From Obrimoposthia wandeli (lineage: Eukaryota), in contig CDROCS010000506.1 in assembly GCA_977020255.1 (NCBI GenBank), positions 186,001 through 250,000 on the forward strand: a stretch of DNA of 64,000 nucleotides, written 5' to 3'. The translations under genes and the position numbers were made by a program. Under the pieces are notes generated by a model, which was given only the letters and a program-made list of their open reading frames with translations, was not told the DNA's origin and did not search any database. Positions 1 through 21,781 of the stretch are shown here, piece after piece (positions within the stretch are counted from its first letter, which is position 1; each line of letters opens with the position of its first letter).

Positions 1-234
1 CTCACAGATCCCAACTCTACATTGTATGGCAATGCTGACAACATGCTTTATCCCAACATAAAAGTGACCCACAAATATAAAGGGTTACAGGCTATGTTTA
101 TCAATCGAATGCACTACCTTCACGATACCCTAGGTTATGATATTTACTTTCCCGAAGATGATCTTGACCGCCCCCCAGCAGAGTTTGTCACGTTACTGCG
201 TCAATTTAAAACACATTGTCCTAGATCAGTGTAA
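1..234 (+). CDS. 3' end of an unidentified protein (runs off window start)
   Basis: Frame open from base 1 to TAA at 232-234; no family motif recognised. Confidence 0.45.
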   Translation, partial: LTDPNSTLYGNADNMLYPNIKVTHKYKGLQAMFINRMHYLHDTLGYDIYFPEDDLDRPPAEFVTLLRQFKTHCPRSV

Positions 235-235
235 A

Positions 236-250
236 TGGTAATAATTATCA
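236..250. promoter_or_regulatory. Fur box (7-1-7)
   Basis: TGGTAAT-A-ATTATCA, one mismatch from TGATAAT-N-ATTATCA, ~90 bp upstream of the 673-aa gene. Confidence 0.75.
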
Positions 251-257
251 ATTAGAC

Positions 258-301
258 TTGCATTAAATATTTTTATATGGATAATACGAACTATTCTCAT
301 T
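258..301 (+). promoter_or_regulatory. Putative sigma70 promoter overlapped by a second Fur-like box
   Basis: TTGCAT (258-263)-N16-GATAAT (280-285); AATACGAACTATTCTCATT (283-301) matches AATGAGAATNATTCTCATT at 15/18. Confidence 0.5.
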
Positions 302-339: not shown

Positions 340-2361
340 GTGAAAAAGTCTGCCCTTTGCTTTGCCATCTCTTCAGCTTTACTTACTGCTTCATTTGCAT
401 CACATGCTGCAAACGTACAAGTACTTGATAAAACACTTTCTCCTGCTGCAAACTTTCTTGCATATACAGAATTCGAATTATCAGGTGAACCACTTGCTGA
501 ATCTCTTGGTTTAGACCTTGACGTTTTAGACCCTAACCAAGTTGACCAGCCGACTGCATTCGATTATGCCGCTGGTATTGAAAGTTATGAATACTCAGAA
601 GAAGCGATGTATGCGTTAAACTACCAGTCTACGATGGGTCCTCACCTTGTAAATGGTCCAGTAAACCAAGCTCGCGGTGGTTCTCTTGCCGATCTAGGTA
701 AACGTTTCATCTCACTAGCAGGAGCAGTTGGTTTCCCAAGTGAAGAAATTCCATTAAATATGTATCCTATCTCTGTACCATACGTATCAGGTAATCCTGA
801 GTTCGTCGGTAAAGTAGATACAACTAAAGTAAATGGCGAAGAACTAGAAGTATTATCAGCAACAGGTAAAGCAGCAGTTCACAACACCGTAATTCCAGCT
901 TACTTCCGTGACTACAAAACACTCGCATGGGACAGCGCAAGTTTCGATAAAGCCTTAAACCCTGGCGCAATCGGCAGCATCTTCCTTAAAGAAGTCATGT
1001 GGTCACAAGATTTTCTCGGTGGCATGCACGTTACGACGACAGATGAAGAAGTTGAAGCAACATCAAGTACAATGGATCAAGATGGCGTACACAGTCTTGG
1101 TGTATCCGCTGCCGATGGTTTCAACGGTATGATCTTAACTGAAATGTCACTAGATAAGTTACTTATCCTACAACAGCAACTTGGCTTTGACGGTAACAAG
1201 CTAGGCGTTAAATTTGGTCCTGATTATGATGCATCTAAAAAACCTATCTGGTTTGCACATAAAGTCGCTGTTAAAGAAACACAGAAAAACAACGTCAATC
1301 ACATCGGTGAATTATCAGTAACAGATGGTTCTTCGTCATTACGTGATACTTGGATGCTATTGTGGCCAGTAAGTGAATTCTATGCATTTACTGACCAGCG
1401 TACAGCGAACACAGCGCAAAACCCAGCATTCAAAGCTGTGTTTGATGGCAAACCATTTGCTGCAGCACCAAAACAAAATATTGATAACAAGACAAGCAAC
1501 AATGTAATCGCTGACGATGCTTTCTCTGTTGCCAGCAACGTGGCTAACCTGTCGTTCCAAAACTTAGCAAACCTACATTTCAATAAGAAAGCAGGTACGT
1601 TTGTTACTCAATACGACGGCAAGCAAAATGCACAAGTTGAGACATTTGACGCGGCATACAGCATCGTAGCACTATCAATTTACCAACGTTCACAAGATGC
1701 ATTACCAGTAGGTTATGCAGCAGCAGACGGCGGTGATGTAGATTTAGCAACACCTCAAGGTAAACAAGCACTTAGTCTAATCAAAGCCCAAGCAGATTAC
1801 ATCGTTAACACGTTAGTAGCGAAAAATGGTCTCGTATATGACGGCGCCACAATTGGTAAATCAGTAGATAAAAATCAATCACTTGACGCGCAATTCTCTG
1901 CAATTCGTGGCTTAGTTGCTGCTTACCTTGCAACACAAGACGAAAGCTACAAGCAAGCAGCACGTTCAATCTTCCTTGCGGTAGAGAAAAACATGTTTGA
2001 TGCAGAACTAGGTACTTGGGCACAAACGCCAGGTAAAGCAACAATCCACACACCATTAACTGCTGCAGCAATCTCGGGTGGTTTACGTGAAACAATGCTT
2101 CACCTTGCTAACGAAGAAGCCGAGCATGTTCCAGCACTCGAACTACAACACTTAACAGAGCGTTACACTGCTTGGTTCAAGAAAGTAGTAAACGGTGGTC
2201 AACAATTATCAGAATGGGTTGGTGATTCAGGTGAAAACTTACTGAAAGACAACAATACTACCGATTCAGATAATGATGGCGTACACCAAGTAACAGGTGC
2301 AGGTGGTAAATTTGGTACAGCGCAAACGATGGCAGCAAAAGTGTCGGTTAGTGCAAACTAG
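340..2361 (+). CDS. Large secreted acidic protein of unknown function; C-terminal region possibly alpha/alpha-barrel-like
   Basis: 673-aa ORF, GTG start after AAGGA RBS, Sec signal ending ASHA; Asp/Glu-rich; DSDNDG motif; helix segment AIRGLVAAYLATQDESYKQAARSIF recalls six-hairpin/YyaL-type repeats; codon choice looks like a highly expressed gene. Confidence 0.85.
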   Translation: MKKSALCFAISSALLTASFASHAANVQVLDKTLSPAANFLAYTEFELSGEPLAESLGLDLDVLDPNQVDQPTAFDYAAGIESYEYSEEAMYALNYQSTMGPHLVNGPVNQARGGSLADLGKRFISLAGAVGFPSEEIPLNMYPISVPYVSGNPEFVGKVDTTKVNGEELEVLSATGKAAVHNTVIPAYFRDYKTLAWDSASFDKALNPGAIGSIFLKEVMWSQDFLGGMHVTTTDEEVEATSSTMDQDGVHSLGVSAADGFNGMILTEMSLDKLLILQQQLGFDGNKLGVKFGPDYDASKKPIWFAHKVAVKETQKNNVNHIGELSVTDGSSSLRDTWMLLWPVSEFYAFTDQRTANTAQNPAFKAVFDGKPFAAAPKQNIDNKTSNNVIADDAFSVASNVANLSFQNLANLHFNKKAGTFVTQYDGKQNAQVETFDAAYSIVALSIYQRSQDALPVGYAAADGGDVDLATPQGKQALSLIKAQADYIVNTLVAKNGLVYDGATIGKSVDKNQSLDAQFSAIRGLVAAYLATQDESYKQAARSIFLAVEKNMFDAELGTWAQTPGKATIHTPLTAAAISGGLRETMLHLANEEAEHVPALELQHLTERYTAWFKKVVNGGQQLSEWVGDSGENLLKDNNTTDSDNDGVHQVTGAGGKFGTAQTMAAKVSVSAN

Positions 2362-2441: not shown

Positions 2442-2477
2442 GCAAAAAGGGATGAGATTTTACTCAGCCCTTTTTGC
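2442..2477 (+). terminator. Intrinsic terminator/attenuator inside the cluster
   Basis: GCAAAAAGGGATGAG...CTCAGCCCTTTTTGC hairpin with T tract. Confidence 0.7.
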
Positions 2478-2511
2478 GTTTTCATTACGTCGATATGAAT
2501 AAGGTTTTATC

Positions 2512-2994
2512 ATGTCAATTCAAATAGCTACCTCAACCAGTGATAATGCTTGGTCACGTTTACAAGATCATTTTAAACGTTTAGCCTTTCACCACAAAAA
2601 AGCCGAAGCAATATTATATTTAATGTTCTTATCAGGGCTTTTACTGTGGCCATTTATCAGCATTCCATGGCAAGTAGAACGCACTGTACTGCTCATGCAT
2701 ATGCTTGCTGGTATTAGTATCTTCCCTGCTTTTGTTGGTAGTTTTTGGCTGTCTCATCGAAATCTTATTCAAAAAAGTAACAAGAAATTCTTGCGTCAAA
2801 CTGGCAATGTGATTGAGTACTTACTTGTTACTTGCACTCTGACTGGTGTTTATCTCACTTTTTGGGGAAACACAGGTAATGACTTCAGTATCCTGATGCA
2901 AGATATCCATTTTTACAGCTCATGGTTACTTACCCCGCTTGTTCTTCGCCACGCATGGCGCTGGACTGTCATTAAATTCTTTAGGAAGTCATAA
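2512..2994 (+). CDS. Small multi-pass membrane protein, cytochrome b-like
   Basis: 160 aa, ~4 hydrophobic segments, His pairs in TM helices including H-x13-H (IHFYSSWLLTPLVLRH). Confidence 0.65.
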   Translation: MSIQIATSTSDNAWSRLQDHFKRLAFHHKKAEAILYLMFLSGLLLWPFISIPWQVERTVLLMHMLAGISIFPAFVGSFWLSHRNLIQKSNKKFLRQTGNVIEYLLVTCTLTGVYLTFWGNTGNDFSILMQDIHFYSSWLLTPLVLRHAWRWTVIKFFRKS

Positions 2995-2995
2995 T

Positions 2996-3844
2996 ATGTT
3001 TGCCAGTTTTTTAATTACTTTCCGTGAAGGACTCGAAGCCTTCCTACTTGTAGGCATCATTCTGTCTTACCTCGCCAAGCTTGGTGAATCAAAACACAAC
3101 AAACTTATCTATATTGGAGTGGCGCTGGGTTTAATTGCCTCGTTAATTGTTGCTTTCATTTTCCAGTTTGTAGTCGACCAGTTTGACTCCCATGAATATC
3201 GTAATTTATTAATGGCGGGTATTTTAAGCTTTGCGACTGTCGTCCTTACCTACATGGCAATTTGGATGCAACGCCAGGCTAAAAGCCAAGTAGCAAATAT
3301 GCAGAACAATATCCGTGCAATATTAACCACGGGTAACGTTTTTGGGTTAATCTTTCTGGCCTTCCTAGCTGTGATGCGCGAAGGCTTCGAAACCGTGTTA
3401 TTTTTCTCAGCATTGATGTATTCAGGCCAAGGCGACTTTTCATTACAAGATGGTTTAATTGGCGCAGGCGCCGGTCTTGTTGCATCGCTTGTACTCGTTA
3501 TCGTATTAATGCGTGGTACCCGTAAAGTACCAATCCAAGCATTCTTCAAATGGACTAGCTTGTTAATCATTATTATTGCCGCTGGGCTATTATCTTCAGC
3601 AACCAATATGCTACAGAGCGCCGACGTATTGCCCGTATTCCAAACAGCCGTATTTGATATTAGCCATATCCTTGATGATCAAGGTGTATTTGGCACTTTC
3701 TTACGGGCTTTATTTGGTTATAATTCATCACCAAATCTATTACCACTGCTTGTTTGGATTATTTATTTAGCGGTATTTAGCGTTTTCTGGCAGCGTGGTT
3801 ATCAAACACAGGCCAAACCAACAGCTAATGTAAGTAATACATAG
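2996..3844 (+). CDS. FTR1-family iron permease
   Basis: Two RExxE motifs (FREGLE, MREGFE), ~7 TM; true start ATG 2996 follows AGGAAG RBS and upstream stop (track start 2939 too long). Confidence 0.92.
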   Translation: MFASFLITFREGLEAFLLVGIILSYLAKLGESKHNKLIYIGVALGLIASLIVAFIFQFVVDQFDSHEYRNLLMAGILSFATVVLTYMAIWMQRQAKSQVANMQNNIRAILTTGNVFGLIFLAFLAVMREGFETVLFFSALMYSGQGDFSLQDGLIGAGAGLVASLVLVIVLMRGTRKVPIQAFFKWTSLLIIIIAAGLLSSATNMLQSADVLPVFQTAVFDISHILDDQGVFGTFLRALFGYNSSPNLLPLLVWIIYLAVFSVFWQRGYQTQAKPTANVSNT

Positions 3845-4055: not shown

Positions 4056-5531
4056 ATGTCGAAAAAAATTGTAATTTTAGGCGCAGGTCCAGCTGGACTG
4101 ATGGCCGCATGGGAATTTAATCAAGCTGGCTATGAAGTCACCATCCTAGAACGTGAAGAGTTTGTTGGCGGTATGTGCGCAACCCAAACATTCCAAGGTG
4201 AAAAAGGCGAATACCGTTTTGATTACGGTGGCCATCGCTTTATTACTAAAAATCCGAAACTATTACAGTTTATCGACGATTTAATGACGGATGATCTGCT
4301 TTATGCTGAACGTACCAGTGTGATCCGTTTTAAAGGCCGTACCTACAACTACCCACTCGCGATTGGTAACCTACTGCGTAATGCGCCGATCAGCTTATTA
4401 GCGGGCGCAGCGGTAGATTTAGTATTTAAACTACCTTTCCAAAAACGCCCAAGTGAACAGAGCACCAGTAACTTTGCCGAATGGATTGAAACGCGCTTTG
4501 GTACCACGTTATACAAAAACTTCTTCGAAGGTTACACCGGTAAGCTTTGGGGCATCGACCCACGTCAACTCTCTGCTGACTGGGCATCACAACGTATAAG
4601 CTTGTTAGATTTAAAAGATGTGGCACGAAGATTAATACCCACGCGCGGCGCAACACCTCGTACCTATGCTAAGAAATACCGTTATCCTAAACTCGGCTTT
4701 GGTCAAATGTATACCAAGCTTGCTGAAAAGTTACAGCTGCAAGGCGTAACCATAGTACAAGGTGCGAATATCAGCGCGTTGCAGCAAGGCCATGATCCAC
4801 GTAAACATAATGAGCTTAATAAGAGCAATAGCATTGATGCCGTGACTTATGAGTTTAACGGTGAAACTCATACGATTAGCTGTGATCATGTTGTCGGCAC
4901 AATTCCATTACCTGTGGTTTGTACATTAACAGGGTTCGATTCAGGTCTAACTTATCGTTCACTGCGCTTTTTCAACATGCCAATGGCAACAGAAAATGTG
5001 TCACAGAATACCTGGCAGTACCTGTCCGACCCAGAATTAATCGGCACTCGTTTGCAAGAACCTCGTCGCCGTTCACCCTTCATGGCCCCCGAAGGACAAA
5101 CATCTGTGATGATTGAGATCCCTTGTGACAAAGGTGATGATGTTTGGAACATGGACAACGACAAACTATTAAAACGAGTAAAAGAAGACCTTGATCATTT
5201 AGACGTACCCGATGTCAGTACCGGTGAATACTTTACCACTTACACGGAATACGCTTATCCGATGATGGACGTGCGCTATAACGCCAAACGTGAAGCCGCG
5301 ATTAAACACCTTAACCAATTTGATAATTTGGTCATGACTGGTCGCCAAGGTACTTTCCGTTATATTTTTACTGATACAGCAATGGAAATGGGCTTAATGG
5401 CTGCAGAAGGTATTATTAAAGGTGAAGATAATCGCCGTCAGATCTTTGATCACCGTAACGAAAAAACAGTCATTGAAGTGCAAAGCATTATGGATGATAA
5501 AAAAACACCAGAGGGTAAAAATGTCACTTAA
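4056..5531 (+). CDS. FAD-dependent oxidoreductase, UDP-galactopyranose mutase/HemY-like superfamily
   Basis: GAGPAG dinucleotide fold, DYGGHRF, YAYPM, GRQGTFRY motifs; 491 aa. Confidence 0.8.
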   Translation: MSKKIVILGAGPAGLMAAWEFNQAGYEVTILEREEFVGGMCATQTFQGEKGEYRFDYGGHRFITKNPKLLQFIDDLMTDDLLYAERTSVIRFKGRTYNYPLAIGNLLRNAPISLLAGAAVDLVFKLPFQKRPSEQSTSNFAEWIETRFGTTLYKNFFEGYTGKLWGIDPRQLSADWASQRISLLDLKDVARRLIPTRGATPRTYAKKYRYPKLGFGQMYTKLAEKLQLQGVTIVQGANISALQQGHDPRKHNELNKSNSIDAVTYEFNGETHTISCDHVVGTIPLPVVCTLTGFDSGLTYRSLRFFNMPMATENVSQNTWQYLSDPELIGTRLQEPRRRSPFMAPEGQTSVMIEIPCDKGDDVWNMDNDKLLKRVKEDLDHLDVPDVSTGEYFTTYTEYAYPMMDVRYNAKREAAIKHLNQFDNLVMTGRQGTFRYIFTDTAMEMGLMAAEGIIKGEDNRRQIFDHRNEKTVIEVQSIMDDKKTPEGKNVT

Positions 5532-6159
5532 AGCGACTAATACAACGTTTGTGAAAACAAGCGTAATAAACACCAGCATGATGAAATCATTTATCCTAAG
5601 CTTTTTTGTCTTGCTATTTAGCACACAAAGTTTTGCTTATTCTTATGCTGCAGCAGGTAAAGAACCGTTAATTGAAGGACGAGAAGTGCTATTAAAAGCA
5701 TTATCAACGGATGATTATACCGCTGTACAAGCTGCCTATAATACCATGCAAGCTGAGTTCGTTTACTTCAATGAACACCATGGTTTAAATCTTGATGAAC
5801 AGATGGAAAAAGCCATCTCAAATAAAGACCAGCAAGGTGTAACGGGGGCACTCGTCACCACGATGAAAGCCGAAGTAATGCGCCGCCTTGAAGGTGCAGA
5901 GCAAAACATTAACGATTACCAAGTCGCTAAAGTGTTAGTGGTCAAAAGTAAGTTATTTATTGATTTACTGGCTGCTGATTTGACGGCTGATAATCGCCAG
6001 AAAGCAGATGTAGCGATCCGTGGGGCGCTCGCCTCTATCGGTAACCCAGGGGTATTTGGTGTTGGTCAAAAACCTGCCGATTTAACACGCTTTATTGCCT
6101 TCCGTACTGACTTACAAACGGCACTGCAATTTACATTACCCGATGCACCAACGAAGTAG
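5521..6159 (+). CDS. Secreted all-helical protein of unknown function
   Basis: ATG 5521 after GAGGG RBS overlaps upstream stop (alternative start 5578); signal-like FILSFFVLLFSTQSFA; amphipathic helices. Confidence 0.75.
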   Translation: MSLKATNTTFVKTSVINTSMMKSFILSFFVLLFSTQSFAYSYAAAGKEPLIEGREVLLKALSTDDYTAVQAAYNTMQAEFVYFNEHHGLNLDEQMEKAISNKDQQGVTGALVTTMKAEVMRRLEGAEQNINDYQVAKVLVVKSKLFIDLLAADLTADNRQKADVAIRGALASIGNPGVFGVGQKPADLTRFIAFRTDLQTALQFTLPDAPTK

Positions 6160-7576
6160 TAAGCCTTGCTACGCTGATTTAATTATCGGTATTAGCGTAA
6201 TAGCCTGCATTGCAGGCTATTTTGGCTTACTCAATTATTACAGTTTTGATATTAGCAGTGATGATGCACTGTACTTTCAGCGTGCATTAACTTATTTTTC
6301 GGTATTAGAGTTCAGCCCTCACTTTCCTGGATATCCTGGCTTTGTATGGTTAGAACGCCTTGTCTATGCAATCAGTCAACACCCGAACAGTAATGTATTA
6401 GTCAGTTACTTTTCTGCCATAGCATTAACCTTAAGCGTTTTTGCCTATTGTTATCAGCGCATGCATACCAAGTCATTTGCATTAGTCGCTGTACTGTTGT
6501 TTTTAGTGCAGGGCAATATCGCCGAATTAGCCTTTAACGGTTTGTCTGATGCTTCAGCATTGTGGTTTTTTAGCTTATATTTATTATGCACGCGCTTTGA
6601 TCCACCACCGTTACAAAGACCGACATTCACAGCTACATTTACCACAACATGCACAGCGATTATCAGCGGCTTATTATTGGCGGCATGTTTAGCAACGCGG
6701 CCGTCTTATTTACCTTTAGTTAGCAGCGCGATGCTATTGGCACTCTGTTACCAAGATAAAATCCAATCAAGCTATAAACAACTTGGTTGGCAGATAATCA
6801 GTATTACTGTTATTGGATTTATTTGCGCACTCTATGTGTTTATGCAAGACGGCTGGGCTTATTTTGAAGAAGGTCAACGCTTTACCCAAGGCCATTTTGC
6901 TATTTGGGGCAATACCACAAGGTCCACTGACTCATTACTCAGCCAGTGGCTGACAACATTAACCAATACCTATTCCACTTTCGGGCTGATATTATTAACC
7001 TCAATCCTCGTCATTGGTTTATATATCACCAAAACCCGTGGACTCAGTATTCTAGCCTGTTGCTGGTTAGCTTGGATAATTCGTGGACAAAACCCAGAGA
7101 ACATTCGTCATTTAGCTGTATTGGGCTTATTGCTGCCAATAATCAGCGGGCAGCTACTTGAATATTTTTATCATACCCAGCGCCTTCGCCCCGTCCTTAT
7201 TTTATTCATAGGGGGGTTATTAATAACCTTAAGTAGTCACAGTCTCAAGCAATTTACCGCACAAAAAAATGCACCCGTATTACAAGCGAGTCAGTTCTTA
7301 AATACCATAGAAAAACAACAAATCATCATCAGTAATTATAATATTGATAACCTGCGTAATAATCTGCCCCAGCATGTCGTGTTAGACCGTCATTATCAAA
7401 ACAGCAGTAATTACCAAGCCCAACAGCAAGACTACTGGCGTCTAAGCAGTAATAAGCTAGACTCGAATCCACTGGATAATGAACATTTAGTGGCTCAATT
7501 TAAAGGTCGTTTTCTTGGTGAGCGCAGTTTATACCTCTATTACTTTGATCCTAATCATTTAAGCTCGCAAACATAA
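6143..7576 (+). CDS. Polytopic membrane protein, GT-C/PMT-like glycosyltransferase candidate
   Basis: N-terminal TM followed by acidic loop SSDDALYF...SPHFPGYP, then ~10 TM and a soluble C-terminal tail; start uncertain (6095 TTG or 6143 ATG). Confidence 0.6.
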   Translation: MHQRSSKPCYADLIIGISVIACIAGYFGLLNYYSFDISSDDALYFQRALTYFSVLEFSPHFPGYPGFVWLERLVYAISQHPNSNVLVSYFSAIALTLSVFAYCYQRMHTKSFALVAVLLFLVQGNIAELAFNGLSDASALWFFSLYLLCTRFDPPPLQRPTFTATFTTTCTAIISGLLLAACLATRPSYLPLVSSAMLLALCYQDKIQSSYKQLGWQIISITVIGFICALYVFMQDGWAYFEEGQRFTQGHFAIWGNTTRSTDSLLSQWLTTLTNTYSTFGLILLTSILVIGLYITKTRGLSILACCWLAWIIRGQNPENIRHLAVLGLLLPIISGQLLEYFYHTQRLRPVLILFIGGLLITLSSHSLKQFTAQKNAPVLQASQFLNTIEKQQIIISNYNIDNLRNNLPQHVVLDRHYQNSSNYQAQQQDYWRLSSNKLDSNPLDNEHLVAQFKGRFLGERSLYLYYFDPNHLSSQT

Positions 7577-7585
7577 CTGCAATTA

Positions 7586-7629
7586 TTGCACTATCGCGCC
7601 AAAACTATATAATGATAACCATTCTTAAT
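7586..7629 (+). promoter_or_regulatory. sigma70 promoter with overlapping Fur box for the cytochrome gene
   Basis: TTGCAC (7586-7591)-N16-TATAAT (7608-7613); AATGATAACCATTCTTAAT at 7611-7629. Confidence 0.65.
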
Positions 7630-7667: not shown

Positions 7668-10649
7668 ATGAATATAAAAATGTTGCCTAAATTAATGTTT
7701 ACTTTACTGCTGCTAGTAAGCCAGTCACTTTATGCCAGCACTGTTAATGCCAATGCGGCTGATAGCAATATTGCTCATGCTAAAAGTACTTATGCAAATA
7801 CCAAAAGTAACAGCTTATTACTATCAACTGATAAAACTCAGTTTATTAGTGCAAATATGGATGCAGGCAGTGTCAGTATTCTTGATGCTGAAAGTGGTCA
7901 ATTATTAGCAGAACAAGCATTAGGTAAAGATTTACGCCGTCTGGCACTAGATCCGATTAACAACCAATTATTAGTCAGTGATTATCTGGCAGATCAACTG
8001 TATCTGATTGATGCAAAAACGCTAAAGTTAATTAAAACCATTAAAACAGGTTACCGTCCTTTTGGTATTGTTTATGACGAATATAATAGGCAGTATTACG
8101 TCACTTTATTCGAAGCCAAACAACTATTAACTGTATCGACAGAGGGTGAGATCACAGCAACAACGCCAACAGCAGAGACGCCGCGTGGACTCGCTCTGGC
8201 AGCCGATGGGCGTTTATTTATCACCCACAGCATGACAGGTCAGGTATCAATTTATGATACACGTTCTGCCACGCTGCAATTAAATAAGATAATTCAACTT
8301 GTCGATACGCCAGCGCATGCGTCTCGCGCGGTACCACAAGGTAAACCACGTGTACTCGATAATATTGCGATATCACCCGATGGTACGCAAGCTTGGTTAC
8401 CGCATGTATTGTGGTCATTTTCACAAAATTTTCAATTTCAATCGACAGTCTTCCCCACTATTTCATTACTTGACCTTACACCAGGTAAAGAAAAAGAAAT
8501 GGTTGATAAGCGTAAGCAATTATTTAAGCAAATAAACATTATCGAGAATAACAACACCACACGTATTGTCTCAAATCCACATGATGTTTCATTTCGTGAA
8601 GACGGTAAAAAAGTCTTTATTAGCTTATCTGGATCTGAGGACTTGCTGGTATTCGATTTATCTCGCCAAGCTAAAATAGGTAAAAAGTCTAAACGCCATC
8701 GTCGAACCAAGTTACAAGGCGGCGTGAAAGCCACGCAAATATATCGTCATATTCCAGGCAGTAATCCACGTAGCCTAATTGAAAAAGACGGCACCCTTTA
8801 TGTGCAAAATGCCATGTCGCACGACTTAGTCAGCTTTGATGTCAGTGGCAAAGGGCCTTTTGCTAAAGTTAAACTCGCTAATGCGCAGTTCGCCAAACTG
8901 ATTAATCAAGATCCAATCGCGCCAGAATTACGTTTAGGTAAAACCCTGTTCAATCTTGCCAACAGTGAAAAATTTGAAAACAGCGCCATGGCGGGTGATT
9001 TCTGGATGAGCTGTAATTCTTGTCACCTTGACGGTTTCAATTTTACCAACAAATACCTATTAGCTGACGGCACCAAAGACATTAGCCAAAATGCAATGAC
9101 AGGTCACATTGGATTAGCCAGCATGATTGCTGGCGATCCGATCGAAGCTTATATCGATATGATCCAAAAGACCCAAGGTGGTATGGGCACAGATCCGAAA
9201 AAACCTGAGTTACCAAAAGTCGATCCAAAATCACCATCTGTAGAGATCGTCCGTTTAATGTCAGCATTAAACATGTACGTCACGACCAAAGAGAATTTAC
9301 CTTACCTATCAACTTGGTTACGTTTTGATGACGAGCGCAAGTTCACGCACAAGTCAGAATGGTTAAACTCAGCCAGTTGTGAATCATGCCACAGTACCCT
9401 TTATAAGCAGTGGTCGAACTCAAACCATGGTATGCACATGGATAGCCCTTATTATCGCTTCCAAGAAAACTTAGCGGCTGAATCAGAAGGCGAACCCTTT
9501 AGAAATTTATGCCGTGGTTGTCATGCCCCGCAAACGATATTAAATAACAATACAGCGCCGTTGACTCACCTTAATAGCATGTATGAGAAAGAAGGCCAAA
9601 GCCTACGCGATGCATTAAAACAAGGCTTACCAGTCGACGAAACTGGCACCAGTTGTGTATTCTGTCACCGTATAACCAAAGCTGAAGATGCGGGTGGTAA
9701 TACCGATCTTACCGTTAACTTAAAAGACCGAGCAGAATACCTGTTCGAATTTTCGAGTAACCCGGCATTAAAACTCATTGCCGAAGCACAAATAAATGCA
9801 TCTCCACAGCAGCATAAAGACAGCTATTCAAACCCAGCGCTGTATAAAAGTTCGTTATATTGTGCGACTTGTCATAATGAGTTCACTCCAGGTCAAGGTG
9901 CTAATGTAAATAACAACTATGGCGAATGGCAGGCATCTAAATTTAACGCGCCTGACAACCCAGAACAAAACAAAACCTGTATCGATTGTCACATGCGCTC
10001 TGACATGACTGATTTCGATAACGATGTACCGGGACAGGCAACGGATAACGGGCCTATTAAGCCGAACCTCATTGCCCATAACTTTATTGGCGGTAACTAT
10101 TATTTCTCTGATATGCGTTCGAAAGAACACGGTAAACTTAGCCGTGATATCTTACGTAATGCCCTACTACTTGACGTTGAAAGTAGCGAAGATGGCCGTC
10201 ATATAAACGTGAAAGTAACCAACCATAATACCGGCCATAAAATGCCCGGTGGCGCACGTCGTCAAGTATGGGTTGATCTGGTTGTTACCGACAGTCAAGG
10301 TGTCGAGCGTTTAGTCAGTGGCCAATTGAATGATGGTTATTTACCGAAAGACAGCCGTGTATTTGCGAAGAAAAGCGGCTATATGCATGGCGAACCTGTA
10401 GGACTTAAGTTCTGGCGTGTAGAAAAGATTCTAGCAGATACCCGTATATCACCCGATGAAACGCGTATTGAGACGTTTGCTCTACCAGAAAAACTAAGCT
10501 ATCCAATCACCGTAGTTGCTAAAATTAACTACCGCTCTTTCTCAAAACCGTTAACAAGTAAAGTTCAAGCTGCCTTCCCTGAGCAAAACATTCCTTTTGC
10601 CGATGTGATCGAGCTAAACAAAGTCACTAAAGTGTTCCAACAACACTAA
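7668..10649 (+). CDS. Secreted beta-propeller / multiheme cytochrome c fusion (6 CxxCH)
   Basis: Signal peptide; YVTN-like repeats; CNSCH, CESCH, CRGCH, CVFCH, CATCH, CIDCH; C-terminal region resembles c554/c552-type multiheme domain (GHKMPGG). Confidence 0.88.
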   Translation: MNIKMLPKLMFTLLLLVSQSLYASTVNANAADSNIAHAKSTYANTKSNSLLLSTDKTQFISANMDAGSVSILDAESGQLLAEQALGKDLRRLALDPINNQLLVSDYLADQLYLIDAKTLKLIKTIKTGYRPFGIVYDEYNRQYYVTLFEAKQLLTVSTEGEITATTPTAETPRGLALAADGRLFITHSMTGQVSIYDTRSATLQLNKIIQLVDTPAHASRAVPQGKPRVLDNIAISPDGTQAWLPHVLWSFSQNFQFQSTVFPTISLLDLTPGKEKEMVDKRKQLFKQINIIENNNTTRIVSNPHDVSFREDGKKVFISLSGSEDLLVFDLSRQAKIGKKSKRHRRTKLQGGVKATQIYRHIPGSNPRSLIEKDGTLYVQNAMSHDLVSFDVSGKGPFAKVKLANAQFAKLINQDPIAPELRLGKTLFNLANSEKFENSAMAGDFWMSCNSCHLDGFNFTNKYLLADGTKDISQNAMTGHIGLASMIAGDPIEAYIDMIQKTQGGMGTDPKKPELPKVDPKSPSVEIVRLMSALNMYVTTKENLPYLSTWLRFDDERKFTHKSEWLNSASCESCHSTLYKQWSNSNHGMHMDSPYYRFQENLAAESEGEPFRNLCRGCHAPQTILNNNTAPLTHLNSMYEKEGQSLRDALKQGLPVDETGTSCVFCHRITKAEDAGGNTDLTVNLKDRAEYLFEFSSNPALKLIAEAQINASPQQHKDSYSNPALYKSSLYCATCHNEFTPGQGANVNNNYGEWQASKFNAPDNPEQNKTCIDCHMRSDMTDFDNDVPGQATDNGPIKPNLIAHNFIGGNYYFSDMRSKEHGKLSRDILRNALLLDVESSEDGRHINVKVTNHNTGHKMPGGARRQVWVDLVVTDSQGVERLVSGQLNDGYLPKDSRVFAKKSGYMHGEPVGLKFWRVEKILADTRISPDETRIETFALPEKLSYPITVVAKINYRSFSKPLTSKVQAAFPEQNIPFADVIELNKVTKVFQQH

Positions 10650-20113: not shown

Positions 20114-21781
20114 TTATTCGCCTTTAGCAGCTTTAAATGCTTCTGCCATAGCAGAAAGACCAGACTCTTGCGGTTGGCTGTTTACACTAGCCATTGCTTC
20201 TTTCTCGTCAGCTTCATCTTTAGCTTTAACTGAAAGACTAATTACGCGGTTTTTACGATCAACACCAACATATTTAGCTTCAAGTGATTCGCCTACAGAT
20301 AATACTAAGCTTGCATCTTCGATACGGTCGCGAGAGATATCGCCAACACGGATGTAACCTTCAACGCCTTTAGCTAATTCAATTGTTGCGCCTTTAGCGT
20401 CAACTGAAGTAACTGTACCATTAACAATAGCATTCTTCTTGTTATTAGCTAGGTATTCGTTGAACGGGTCTTCATCAATTTGCTTGATGCCTAAAGAAAT
20501 ACGTTCACGCTCAGGGTCTACTTGTAGAACGATAGCTGTGATTTCGTCGCCTTTCTTATATTCACGAACGGCTTCTTCACCAGTAGCATCCCAAGAGATG
20601 TCTGAAAGATGAACTAGACCGTCAATGCCGCCGTCAAGACCGATGAAGATACCGAAATCTGTAATAGATTTGATCTTACCAGTAACTTGCTCGCCTTTAA
20701 TGCGTGAAGTTGAGAAGTTTTCCCAAGGATTAGCAATACATTGCTTAAGACCTAGAGAGATACGACGACGTTCTTCGTCGATATCAAGAACCATAACTTC
20801 AACAGAATCGCCAACATTAACCACTTTAGAAGGGTGAATGTTTTTGTTTGTCCAATCCATTTCAGAAACGTGAACTAAACCTTCAACGCCTTCTTCAATT
20901 TCAACGAAACAACCGTAGTCAGTTAAGTTCGTAACTTTACCCGTAAGCTTAGTGCTTTCTGGGTAACGTTTAGCGATAGCTACCCATGGATCTTCACCAA
21001 GCTGTTTAAGGCCTAGAGATACACGTGTACGTTCGCGGTCGAATTTAAGAACTTTAACGTTGATTTCATCGCCAACATTAACGATTTCACTTGGGTGCTT
21101 AACGCGTTTCCAAGCCATATCAGTAATGTGTAGAAGACCATCAACACCACCAAGATCAACGAATGCGCCATAGTCCGTAAGGTTCTTAACGATACCTTTA
21201 ACTTCTTGACCTTCTTGAAGGTTAGCAAGAAGTTCTTCACGTTCTGCACTGTTTTCAGTTTCGATAACTGCGCGACGTGAAACAACTACGTTGTTACGTT
21301 TTTGGTCAAGTTTGATTACTTTGAACTCTAACTCTTTGCCTTCAAGGTGAGTAGTGTCACGTACAGGACGAACGTCTACTAAAGAACCTGGTAAGAATGC
21401 GCGAATAGTGTTCACTTCAACCGTGAAACCGCCTTTAACTTTACCGTTGATAACACCGATAACAGTTTCTTGGTCTTCGTATGCTTTTTCAAGCTGAATC
21501 CAAGACTCGTGACGTTTAGCTTTTTCACGAGAAAGTTGAGTTTCACCGAAACCATCTTCAATTGATTCTAGTGCTACATCAACTTCTTGACCAACTTCAA
21601 CTTCAAGTTCGCCAGCAGCGTTCTTGAATTCTTCAGCAGGAATAGAAGATTCTGATTTAAGACCAGCGTCAACTAAAACGTAACCGTTTTCGATTGCAAC
21701 AACAGTTGCCTTGATAATGCTACCAGGAGCAGCAAGTTCTTGTAGTGACTCTTCAAAGAGTAAAGCGAAAGATTCATTCAT
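20114..21781 (-). CDS. rpsA: 30S ribosomal protein S1
   Basis: Six S1 repeats ([15 protein letters not shown] etc.), 555 aa. Confidence 0.98.

What the first reader, a model, noticed from the sequence alone, without database searches (positions are those of the whole stretch)
340..2361. Abundant-looking, highly acidic secreted protein heading the iron cluster
Seen: Sec signal; no Cys in the mature chain; dense acidic patches (GIESYEYSEEAMY, TTTDEEVE); DSDNDG and DQDG loops resembling DxDxDG metal-binding motifs; C-terminal helices that recall six-hairpin (alpha/alpha) barrels. It has its own terminator downstream and codon choice like a highly expressed gene. Inference: the main iron-binding or scavenging component, or the substrate of the cluster's glycosylation pair.
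Basis: partly seen in the sequence, partly recalled or inferred. Interest (0 to 1): 0.75.

Follow-up and report, generated by a model that had tools for sequence, protein, structure and literature searches.

The report
Iron-starvation exported six-hairpin barrel protein
This Moritella gene encodes an abundant, exported protein that appears to be iron-repressed, has a sugar-enzyme-like barrel fold and belongs to an unnamed family; its Aeromonas counterpart is strongly induced by iron starvation, and its biochemical role in iron uptake is still unknown.

Summary
The ORF 340-2361 (+) is real. It has a Sec signal, a Cys-free 650-aa mature chain, conserved acidic motifs and an invariant DxDxDG loop. 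A terminator hairpin follows it, and its codon bias is second only to rpsA in the window. "Highly acidic" is overstated: pI 4.8 is ordinary here.

AlphaFold (pLDDT 91) shows the whole chain, not only the C-terminus, as an (alpha/alpha)6 six-hairpin barrel. It resembles GH105/GH88, cellobiose/GlcNAc 2-epimerases and GH76 (Z 17-21). It passes no Pfam or NCBIfam model, so the family is unnamed.

Fur-box-like sites precede the gene in most lineages. Primer mapping shows it is the orthologue of A. hydrophila ORF01830/AHA_2481. That published protein rises 10-fold in the iron-starved exoproteome, and its knockout is less virulent in zebrafish.

Across 80 genomes its steadiest neighbours are a DUF4405-like membrane protein and a propeller-multihaem cytochrome; FTR1 is present in only 29. 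Six of 67 distant relatives carry a fused cytochrome c or cupredoxin.

Best reading (about 0.4): an abundant extracytoplasmic protein that captures an iron species for one-electron redox processing. Iron binding is untested. The idea that it is a glycosylation substrate is not supported.

The parts
216..245 (+). sigma-70-like promoter (TTGTCC, 18 nt, AATAAT)
   Evidence: Consensus scan, 9 of 12 matches. The -10 hexamer is overlapped by the Fur-box-like site. This is a consensus match only.
231..249 (.). Fur-box-like 19-mer GTAAATGGTAATAATTATC (15 of 19 to the consensus)
   Evidence: One of only two sites in the 64-kb window that match 15 of 19 or better. Equivalent sites lie upstream of the orthologues in most lineages.
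280..298 (.). second Fur-box-like site GATAATACGAACTATTCTC (13 of 19), about 60 nt before the start codon
   Evidence: Read. It has the same position and form as the best site in L003 and as the conserved Aeromonas site CATAATGCACACCATTCTC at -72.
340..2361 (+). CDS of the 673-aa exported (alpha/alpha)6 barrel protein, called A673 here
340..408 (+). Sec signal peptide (residues 1-23, cleavage after SHA)
   Evidence: Read from the sequence. pLDDT is below 50 for residues 1-20. There is no lipobox.
457..492 (+). invariant motif LAYTEFELSGEP (residues 40-51)
   Evidence: SGEPxAE is kept in distant full-length relatives.
580..609 (+). motif ESYEYSEEAM (residues 81-90)
   Evidence: ESYEYS is conserved across the superfamily. 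EEAM is found only in the close family.
988..1029 (+). motif KxxMWxQDFLGGMH (K217, W221, H230)
1075..1086 (+). DQDG (residues 246-249)
   Evidence: D246 and G249 are 90% or more conserved.
1576..1578 (+). His413, the only polar residue invariant across the superfamily
2086..2088 (+). Arg583, nearly invariant across the superfamily
2263..2280 (+). DSDNDG loop (residues 642-647), a calcium-type DxDxDG motif
   Evidence: D642, D644 and D646 are invariant. The form DxDxDG(I/V)P is kept in distant relatives.
2442..2485 (+). intrinsic-terminator-like hairpin (2442-2477) plus T-run
   Evidence: z -4.4. A functional equivalent is present in 74 of 79 orthologous loci. Metatranscriptome contigs of relatives end at about 2396.
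2512..2994 (+). 160-aa DUF4405-like membrane protein (B160), the steadiest neighbour
   Evidence: Present in 53 of 80 loci. The Cognaticolwellia orthologue gives a weak DUF4405 hit.
2996..3844 (+). FTR1/EfeU-type iron permease
   Evidence: Pfam FTR1 1.4e-45 and NCBIfam EfeU 6e-61. Present next to the gene in only 29 of 80 loci.
4056..7576 (+). UGM/amine-oxidase-like flavoprotein, 190-aa secreted protein and GT-C-like membrane protein
   Evidence: Present in 37-38 of 80 loci.
7668..10649 (+). beta-propeller multihaem cytochrome (CYT993)
   Evidence: Present in 52 of 80 loci. A Fur-box-like site lies at 7608-7626.

Best explanation
Shown: the gene encodes a highly expressed, Sec-exported, Cys-free protein of about 70 kDa whose whole chain folds as an (alpha/alpha)6 six-hairpin barrel. 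Its expression is probably under Fur control, judged from consensus matches. It founds an unnamed family. It is the orthologue of A. hydrophila ORF01830/AHA_2481, a major exoprotein induced by iron starvation.

Inferred mechanism: it is the abundant capture component of an extracytoplasmic iron-acquisition module. Its barrel pocket holds an iron species, either the ion or an iron-ligand complex. The conserved residues that may line this pocket include H413, K217, W221, R523, R583, Y296, D336 and the ESYEYS and SGEP carboxylates. One-electron carriers then change the redox state of the bound iron. In Moritella these carriers would be the propeller multihaem cytochrome, wired to the membrane by the DUF4405-like protein. 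In distant relatives the carrier is a fused cytochrome c or cupredoxin. The iron then enters through FTR1, or through another transporter in lineages without FTR1. The DxDxDG loop is most likely a structural calcium site. The terminator after the gene keeps the protein in excess over the membrane components, as with the binding proteins of transport operons.
For: Fold: pLDDT 91.4, pTM 0.92. VIA Z is 20.6-17 over 290-340 residues to GH105, AGE/cellobiose epimerase, YteR and GH76.

Iron control: Fur-box-like sites lie upstream in most of 78 loci, including a conserved Aeromonas site.

Experiment on the orthologue: the primers for ORF01830 map to the start and stop of the Aeromonas orthologue, and the 2001-bp gene length agrees. 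iTRAQ ratios are 10.2 and 9.8 under dipyridyl, with 93 peptides. The protein is undetectable without chelator. The knockout LD50 is 2.9e4 against 0.81e4 for wild type.

Excess expression: codon bias is second only to rpsA. The terminator is conserved in 74 of 79 loci although its sequence differs between lineages. Metatranscriptome contigs from four studies cover 320/345-2396 but not 2612-3549.

Redox link: the DUF4405-like gene and the multihaem cytochrome accompany the gene in 53 and 52 of 80 loci. Of 67 near-full-length distant relatives, 5 carry a C-terminal cytochrome c and 1 a plastocyanin-type cupredoxin. These fusions sit next to further cytochromes and a ferritin-like gene.

Other iron contexts: the gene lies beside amonabactin-type siderophore genes in Aeromonas and in a cluster that also holds a PepSY_TM-like gene in Cognaticolwellia.
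Against: No metal or ligand binding has been measured.

The fold class is typical of sugar-acting enzymes, not of iron-binding proteins.

All 27 Aeromonas loci carry the gene without cytochrome, DUF4405-like gene or FTR1 within 10 kb. The protein must therefore be able to work without an adjacent redox partner. Whether partners lie elsewhere in those genomes was not tested.

The Colwellia and Pseudoalteromonas three-gene versions lack a recognisable Fur box.

The 'extracellular' fraction in the Aeromonas study also contains periplasmic proteins, so the final location is unsettled. The reported knockout phenotype is mild.
Confidence: 0.4

Rival explanations
1. It is a carbohydrate-active enzyme of the six-hairpin clan, of epimerase, isomerase, hydrolase or uronate-acting type. 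It would work on an external or envelope glycan: acidic polysaccharides that chelate iron, host glycoconjugates, or the product of the cluster's flavoprotein and GT-C pair. Its link to iron would be indirect.
For: The best structural matches are all sugar enzymes. A broader family profile reaches cellobiose 2-epimerases (E 1.5e-11) and GH76 in the PDB. Some distant relatives pass or approach the C5-epim_C and GlcNAc_2-epim models. Relatives carry T9SS tails or a dockerin, or sit in giant surface proteins, as secreted glycan-acting enzymes do. The conserved K, R, H and W residues suit an anionic sugar.
Against: No family model is passed by the protein or its 64 close homologues. The PDB profile hits come from the generic hairpin repeat, which matches three different hairpins of one epimerase, so no catalytic register follows. 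No conserved DD motif of GH76 is present. The fusions to cytochrome c and cupredoxin, and the cytochrome neighbours, are not explained by this reading. The glycosylation genes are missing from more than half of the loci.
Confidence: 0.25
2. It is a non-redox carrier protein, like a haemophore or a siderophore-binding shuttle. It would be secreted in bulk to bind haem or a ferric chelate and return it to the cell.
For: It is abundant, iron-induced and exported, with a terminator-boosted excess over downstream genes. It lies beside siderophore biosynthesis genes in Aeromonas. His413 is invariant and tyrosines are conserved. The knockout shows a virulence defect.
Against: No TonB-dependent receptor or ABC importer is linked to it in the loci examined. 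The fold is unlike known haemophores. The electron-carrier fusions argue for redox chemistry.
Confidence: 0.15
3. It is chiefly the acceptor substrate of the cluster's flavoprotein and GT-C-like pair: a glycosylated envelope or surface protein.
For: It is co-located with the pair in Moritella, the vibrios and some alphaproteobacteria (37-38 of 80 loci). It has a Ser/Thr-containing acidic loop at residues 232-249.
Against: The pair is absent from all 27 Aeromonas loci and from the three-gene clusters, while the protein's motifs stay invariant. The loop is confidently folded (pLDDT above 90) and is not a low-complexity linker.
Confidence: 0.05

Closest known systems
A. hydrophila LP-2 ORF01830 (= ATCC 7966 AHA_2481), 'FIG00919923 hypothetical protein' (PMC6387970)
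   Same: It is the orthologue: 61-62% identity over the full length, 666 aa, with the same invariant motifs. The published primers map to its start and stop. It is iron-starvation induced and abundant in the culture supernatant.
   Different: In Aeromonas the gene stands alone beside siderophore biosynthesis genes. In Moritella it heads an FTR1-cytochrome cluster. The paper gives no fold, family or biochemical function.
AGE superfamily: N-acylglucosamine 2-epimerase, cellobiose 2-epimerase, YihS (PF07221)
   Same: Both have the (alpha/alpha)6 barrel (Z 18-20, rmsd about 3 A over 330-340 residues). They share the generic hairpin repeat signature at sequence level.
   Different: The Pfam score is 13.5 bits against a cut-off of 23.4. 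This protein is about 250 residues longer, with beta-hairpin insertions. It is exported, whereas AGE enzymes are cytoplasmic (general knowledge). The catalytic His pair could not be aligned.
GH105/GH88 unsaturated uronyl hydrolases (YteR, UGL)
   Same: They give the top structural match (4xuv Z 20.6, 1nc5 Z 19.7).
   Different: Sequence identity is only about 10% and no family model hits. The catalytic Asp was not assessable.
Periplasmic partners of FTR1/EfeU permeases: P19/FtrA, EfeO (cupredoxin + M75), FtrB, FetP
   Same: It has the same operon position and logic: a Fur-controlled exported protein encoded next to an FTR1-type permease. One distant relative carries a cupredoxin, as EfeO does.
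   Different: The fold and sequence are unrelated. FTR1 is present in only 29 of 80 loci.
YyaL/DUF255-type thioredoxin + six-hairpin proteins (e.g. Brucella Bab1_2064, 7tkv)
   Same: A six-hairpin barrel is joined to a redox domain, and the barrels are structurally similar (Z 18.2).
   Different: The redox partner is of a different type, and there is no detectable sequence relationship. That family is also of unknown function.

Membership tests
Six-hairpin (alpha/alpha)6 barrel superfamily (fold level) | Twelve helices arranged as six inner/outer hairpins that form a barrel | tested here: met
   The AF2 model has pLDDT 91.4 and 13 long helices. VIA gives Z 20.6-17 to many six-hairpin enzymes over model residues 25-671. 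Foldseek gives probability 1.0.
AGE / cellobiose 2-epimerase family (PF07221, NF041848) | Score above the curated family threshold | tested here: not met
   13.5 bits against 23.4, and 16.2 bits against 800. Only 1 of 65 homologues gives even a weak hit.
AGE / cellobiose 2-epimerase family | Two catalytic histidines plus an arginine at equivalent barrel positions | not testable with these tools
   No residue-level structural alignment or model coordinates were available. The structure alignments fall in two registers shifted by one hairpin. H230, H413 and R583 are conserved, but their equivalence is unknown.
GH76 alpha-1,6-mannanases | Conserved catalytic Asp-Asp pair | tested here: not met
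   There are no adjacent invariant Asp residues in 65 homologues. The profile hits to GH76 cover only the generic hairpin.
GH105/GH88 | Sequence family membership and a catalytic Asp | tested here: inconclusive
   There is no Pfam hit, but this family gives the top structural match. The catalytic residue could not be aligned.
DUF4856 (label given by UniRef to some homologues) | Match to the Pfam DUF4856 model | tested here: not met
   No hit at E up to 1 in any of 65 homologues.
Bacterial lipoproteins (label given to the M. viscosa homologue) | Lipobox L-[AS]-[GA]-C at the end of the signal peptide | tested here: not met
   The only Cys is residue 7, in the context SALC, and it is not conserved in homologues.
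Known FTR1/EfeU partner proteins (P19, EfeO/M75 imelysin, cupredoxin FtrB, FetP) | Sequence or fold of one of these families | tested here: not met
   There are no such Pfam or NCBIfam hits, and none appears among the structural matches.
DxDxDG calcium-binding loops | A DxDxDG motif that is conserved | tested here: met
   D642, D644 and D646 are invariant, and G647 is conserved in most homologues, including distant ones. Calcium binding itself was not tested.
Fur regulon | A Fur box over the promoter and induction by iron starvation | tested here: met
   Sites matching 15 of 19 and 13 of 19 lie at 231-249 and 280-298, with equivalents in most lineages. Induction of the orthologue is published. 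Fur binding itself was not tested.

The most novel reading that the evidence does not exclude
The family is a new class of extracytoplasmic iron redox protein built on a six-hairpin barrel. It would be a ferroxidase or ferric-reductase scaffold that takes the place of P19 or EfeO beside FTR1. In gamma- and alphaproteobacteria it would be served by a dedicated multihaem cytochrome and cytochrome-b-like anchor. In other phyla the electron carrier (cytochrome c or cupredoxin) is fused to it.
Probability: 0.3. Interest if true: 0.8.

Novelty: new variant of a known kind. Interest (0 to 1): 0.62.

Why it matters
One of the most abundant iron-starvation proteins of Aeromonas has no assigned fold, family or function. 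It is a published vaccine candidate with a virulence phenotype. This work gives it all three leads. It is a six-hairpin barrel. It belongs to a compact, unnamed family spread through marine gamma- and alphaproteobacteria. It is repeatedly joined to one-electron carriers and to FTR1-type permeases. If the barrel does handle iron, it would be a new type of partner for FTR1 uptake systems and a new use of a fold known almost only from sugar enzymes. The question is directly testable with a soluble, Cys-free, easily expressed protein.

Tried and rejected
- Pfam and NCBIfam scans of the protein and of 64 homologues gave no family. The UniRef labels 'DUF4856' and 'Lipoprotein' were therefore rejected.
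- PDB sequence searches with the single protein and with the close-family profile found nothing usable. Only the broad profile A2 reached epimerases and GH76, and it did so through a generic hairpin that gives no catalytic register.
- Literature searches on FTR1 + Moritella, DUF4856, the Moritella secretome, and FTR1 + multihaem found nothing on this family. The FIG identifier returned only the same Aeromonas paper.
- Genomic contexts of the T9SS-type and other distant relatives were on short contigs and were uninformative.
- The simple terminator scan missed the hairpin; folding found it.
- The RNA runs were available only as contigs, so expression could not be quantified. Only the placement of the contigs is reported.
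- I did not test whether Aeromonas genomes carry the cytochrome, the DUF4405-like gene or FTR1 elsewhere.
Full report
**Observation**

The ORF at 340-2361 (+) starts with GTG and encodes 673 aa. An AAGGA lies 6 nt upstream of the start. The N-terminus is a Sec-type leader: MKK, a hydrophobic core, then SHA|AN. The mature chain has 650 aa, no cysteine, pI 4.7 and net charge -32. Of 120 homologues, 117 are also Cys-free after the leader.

The acidic patches, DSDNDG (642-647) and DQDG (246-249) are all present. LAYTEFELSGEP (40-51) and YEYSEEAM (83-90) are the best conserved stretches of the family. D642, D644 and D646 are invariant.

"Highly acidic" is an overstatement. D+E is 11.6% and pI 4.78, which are ordinary values in this window. 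The low pI reflects few K+R.

**Expression signals**

A strong hairpin at 2442-2477 with a T-run follows the stop codon (z -4.4). The simple terminator scan missed it. A terminator-type hairpin with dG of -12 kcal/mol or lower follows the orthologue in 74 of 79 loci, against 13% of random segments. The hairpin sequences differ between lineages, so the feature is kept by function rather than by descent.

Codon bias sets the gene apart. The C-ending fraction is 0.56, against a window mean of 0.33 +/- 0.095, and CGT is 0.90. Only rpsA (20114-21781) is more biased, and the other cluster genes lie at 0.32-0.39.

Contigs from four metatranscriptome studies, from relatives 90-95% identical, cover 320/345 to about 2396. 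They do not cover 2612-3549. These are contigs, so this shows presence and boundaries only, not expression level.

**Organism and family**

The window comes from Moritella: the gene is 98% identical to M. dasanensis. Full-length homologues of 59-73% identity occur in Photobacterium, Vibrio, Aliivibrio, Aeromonas, Motiliproteus, Endozoicomonas and Colwellia-like genera. They also occur in the alphaproteobacteria Pseudovibrio and Terasakiella. In all, 237 GTDB species matched.

No Pfam or NCBIfam model is passed by the protein or by 64 homologues. The UniRef labels "DUF4856" and "Lipoprotein" are not reproduced. An exhaustive profile search of 1.8 billion representatives finds only 292 clusters at E of 0.001 or better, so the superfamily is small.

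**Fold**

AlphaFold2 with 65 sequences gives pLDDT 91.4 and pTM 0.92. The whole chain from 25 to 671 is an (alpha/alpha)6 barrel with beta-hairpin insertions at about 163-186 and 308-329.

VIA-align gives these matches, all at rmsd about 3 A over 290-340 residues:
- Z 20.6 to a GH105 enzyme
- Z 19.9 to a mannose isomerase
- Z 19.7 to YteR
- Z 19.4 and 19.3 to cellobiose 2-epimerases
- Z 18.6 to GH76
- Z 18.2 to a thioredoxin-linked barrel

Foldseek agrees. No family stands out, and the alignments fall in two registers shifted by one hairpin.

A broader profile (A2) reaches cellobiose 2-epimerases (E 1.5e-11) and GH76 at sequence level. It does so only through the generic hairpin repeat at residues about 510-560, which matches three different hairpins of one epimerase. 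The protein is therefore a remote member of the six-hairpin clan. It has no assignable catalytic machinery.

**Iron link**

Fur-box-like 19-mers lie at 231-249 (15 of 19) and 280-298 (13 of 19). Similar sites lie within 300 nt upstream of the orthologue in most lineages, including a conserved Aeromonas site at -72. The Colwellia and Pseudoalteromonas versions lack one.

In Aeromonas the gene lies next to isochorismate synthase, DHB-AMP ligase, isochorismatase and NRPS genes.

The decisive evidence is published. In A. hydrophila LP-2, ORF01830 is homologous to AHA_2481, and its 2001-bp gene encodes 666 aa. It rose 10.2- and 9.8-fold in the extracellular proteome under dipyridyl, with 93 peptides and 56.6% coverage, and it ranked 19th of the identified proteins. 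It was undetectable by western blot without chelator. Its deletion raised the zebrafish LD50 from 0.81e4 to 2.9e4 CFU/ml. The recombinant protein was protective (PMC6387970).

I confirmed orthology in two ways. The paper's cloning primers map to the start (position 10001) and stop (11983) of the Aeromonas orthologue in the fetched loci. The qPCR primers encode GLDLDV and EYSEEA. AHA_2482 is GlgC1 (PMC3341381), which fits the neighbouring gene in L066.

**Context**

Counts of the window's cluster genes found near the gene, across 80 loci:

| Neighbour | Loci with it (of 80) |
|---|---|
| DUF4405-like 160-aa membrane protein | 53 |
| Propeller multihaem cytochrome | 52 |
| Flavoprotein | 38 |
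| 190-aa secreted protein | 37 |
| GT-C-like protein | 37 |
| FTR1 | 29 |

All 27 Aeromonas loci have the gene alone. A three-gene form (this gene, the DUF4405-like gene and the cytochrome) occurs in Colwellia-like genomes. In Cognaticolwellia it is followed by DUF4920 and a PepSY_TM-like gene.

FTR1 and the glycosylation-like pair are therefore optional partners. This argues against the idea that the protein is the pair's substrate.

**Distant relatives**

At 24-32% identity, the conserved residues are H413 (invariant), K217, W221, R583, Y296, S332, ESYEYS, SGEPxAE and DxDxDG(I/V)P.

Among 67 near-full-length representatives:
- 7 carry T9SS sorting tails
- 5 carry a C-terminal cytochrome c
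- 1 carries a C-terminal plastocyanin/azurin-type cupredoxin
- 1 carries a dockerin

Separately from these 67, other relatives are giant surface proteins.

The cytochrome c fusions sit beside further cytochrome c genes. The cupredoxin fusion sits beside a multihaem cytochrome and a ferritin-like gene. Repeated fusion to, and adjacency with, one-electron carriers points to redox chemistry at or on the barrel.

**Interpretation**

Shown: the protein is an abundant, exported six-hairpin barrel of an unnamed family. Its orthologue is induced by iron starvation, and Fur-box-like sites precede the gene here.

Inferred, with confidence about 0.4: it captures an iron species that the cytochromes oxidise or reduce before import. 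The terminator would ensure an excess of the capture protein over the membrane parts. Assigning helices by the hairpin signature places H413, Y296, S332/D336 and Q518 on the face where six-hairpin enzymes bind ligands, and K217, W221, R523 and R583 on inner helices.

Rivals:
- a sugar-acting enzyme with an indirect link to iron (0.25)
- a non-redox haem or siderophore carrier (0.15)
- a substrate of the glycosylation pair (0.05)

The DxDxDG loop is a calcium-type motif. It is not evidence for iron binding.

**Novelty**

The fold is known, and the iron induction of the orthologue is published. The following are new: the fold and family assignment, the wide distribution, the conserved regulatory architecture, and the recurring tie to electron carriers and FTR1. 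No step needed referral.

Noticed in passing
window 7608-7626: A second strong Fur-box-like site (TATAATGATAACCATTCTT, 15 of 19) lies about 40 nt upstream of the multihaem cytochrome gene. This suggests the cluster has a separate internal promoter that is also iron-controlled.
   Followed up: no
window 2939-3844 and 5422-6159: The mechanical ORF starts are probably too early. The FTR1 protein most likely starts at ATG 2996 (MFASFLITFREGLE). The 190-aa secreted protein most likely starts near 5581 (MKSFILSFFVLLFSTQSFA).
   Followed up: partly
L030:15736-16778 (Cognaticolwellia mytili): In the three-gene form of the cluster, the cytochrome gene is followed by a DUF4920 gene and a PepSY_TM-like gene. 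PepSY_TM is a family linked to ferric reduction. A putative metal exporter and a Ni-superoxide dismutase gene lie next door.
   Followed up: partly
L074 and L075 (Terasakiella MAG chromosome, about 1.82 Mb and 2.32 Mb): Two copies of the whole cluster, with identical match statistics, lie 0.5 Mb apart on one chromosome. This is either a large recent duplication or an assembly artefact.
   Followed up: no
L006 and L027 (Oceanospirillales bacterium XeTr1): One genome has two paralogues. One (71% identity) sits in the full seven-gene cluster. The other (64%) stands alone without a recognisable Fur box.
   Followed up: no
L045:20456-22000: In Gammaproteobacteria bacterium 45_16_T64, the DUF4405-like gene and the cytochrome lie about 8.4 kb downstream of the barrel gene rather than adjacent to it.
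   Followed up: no
window 20114-21781 (-): This is a ribosomal protein S1-like gene (555 aa, 18% D+E). It has the strongest codon bias in the window and served as the highly expressed reference.
   Followed up: partly
L066:9314-9865 (Aeromonas media): A DUF1439 gene sits between the siderophore biosynthesis genes and the barrel gene in Aeromonas. The Fur-like site lies in the gap after it.
   Followed up: no
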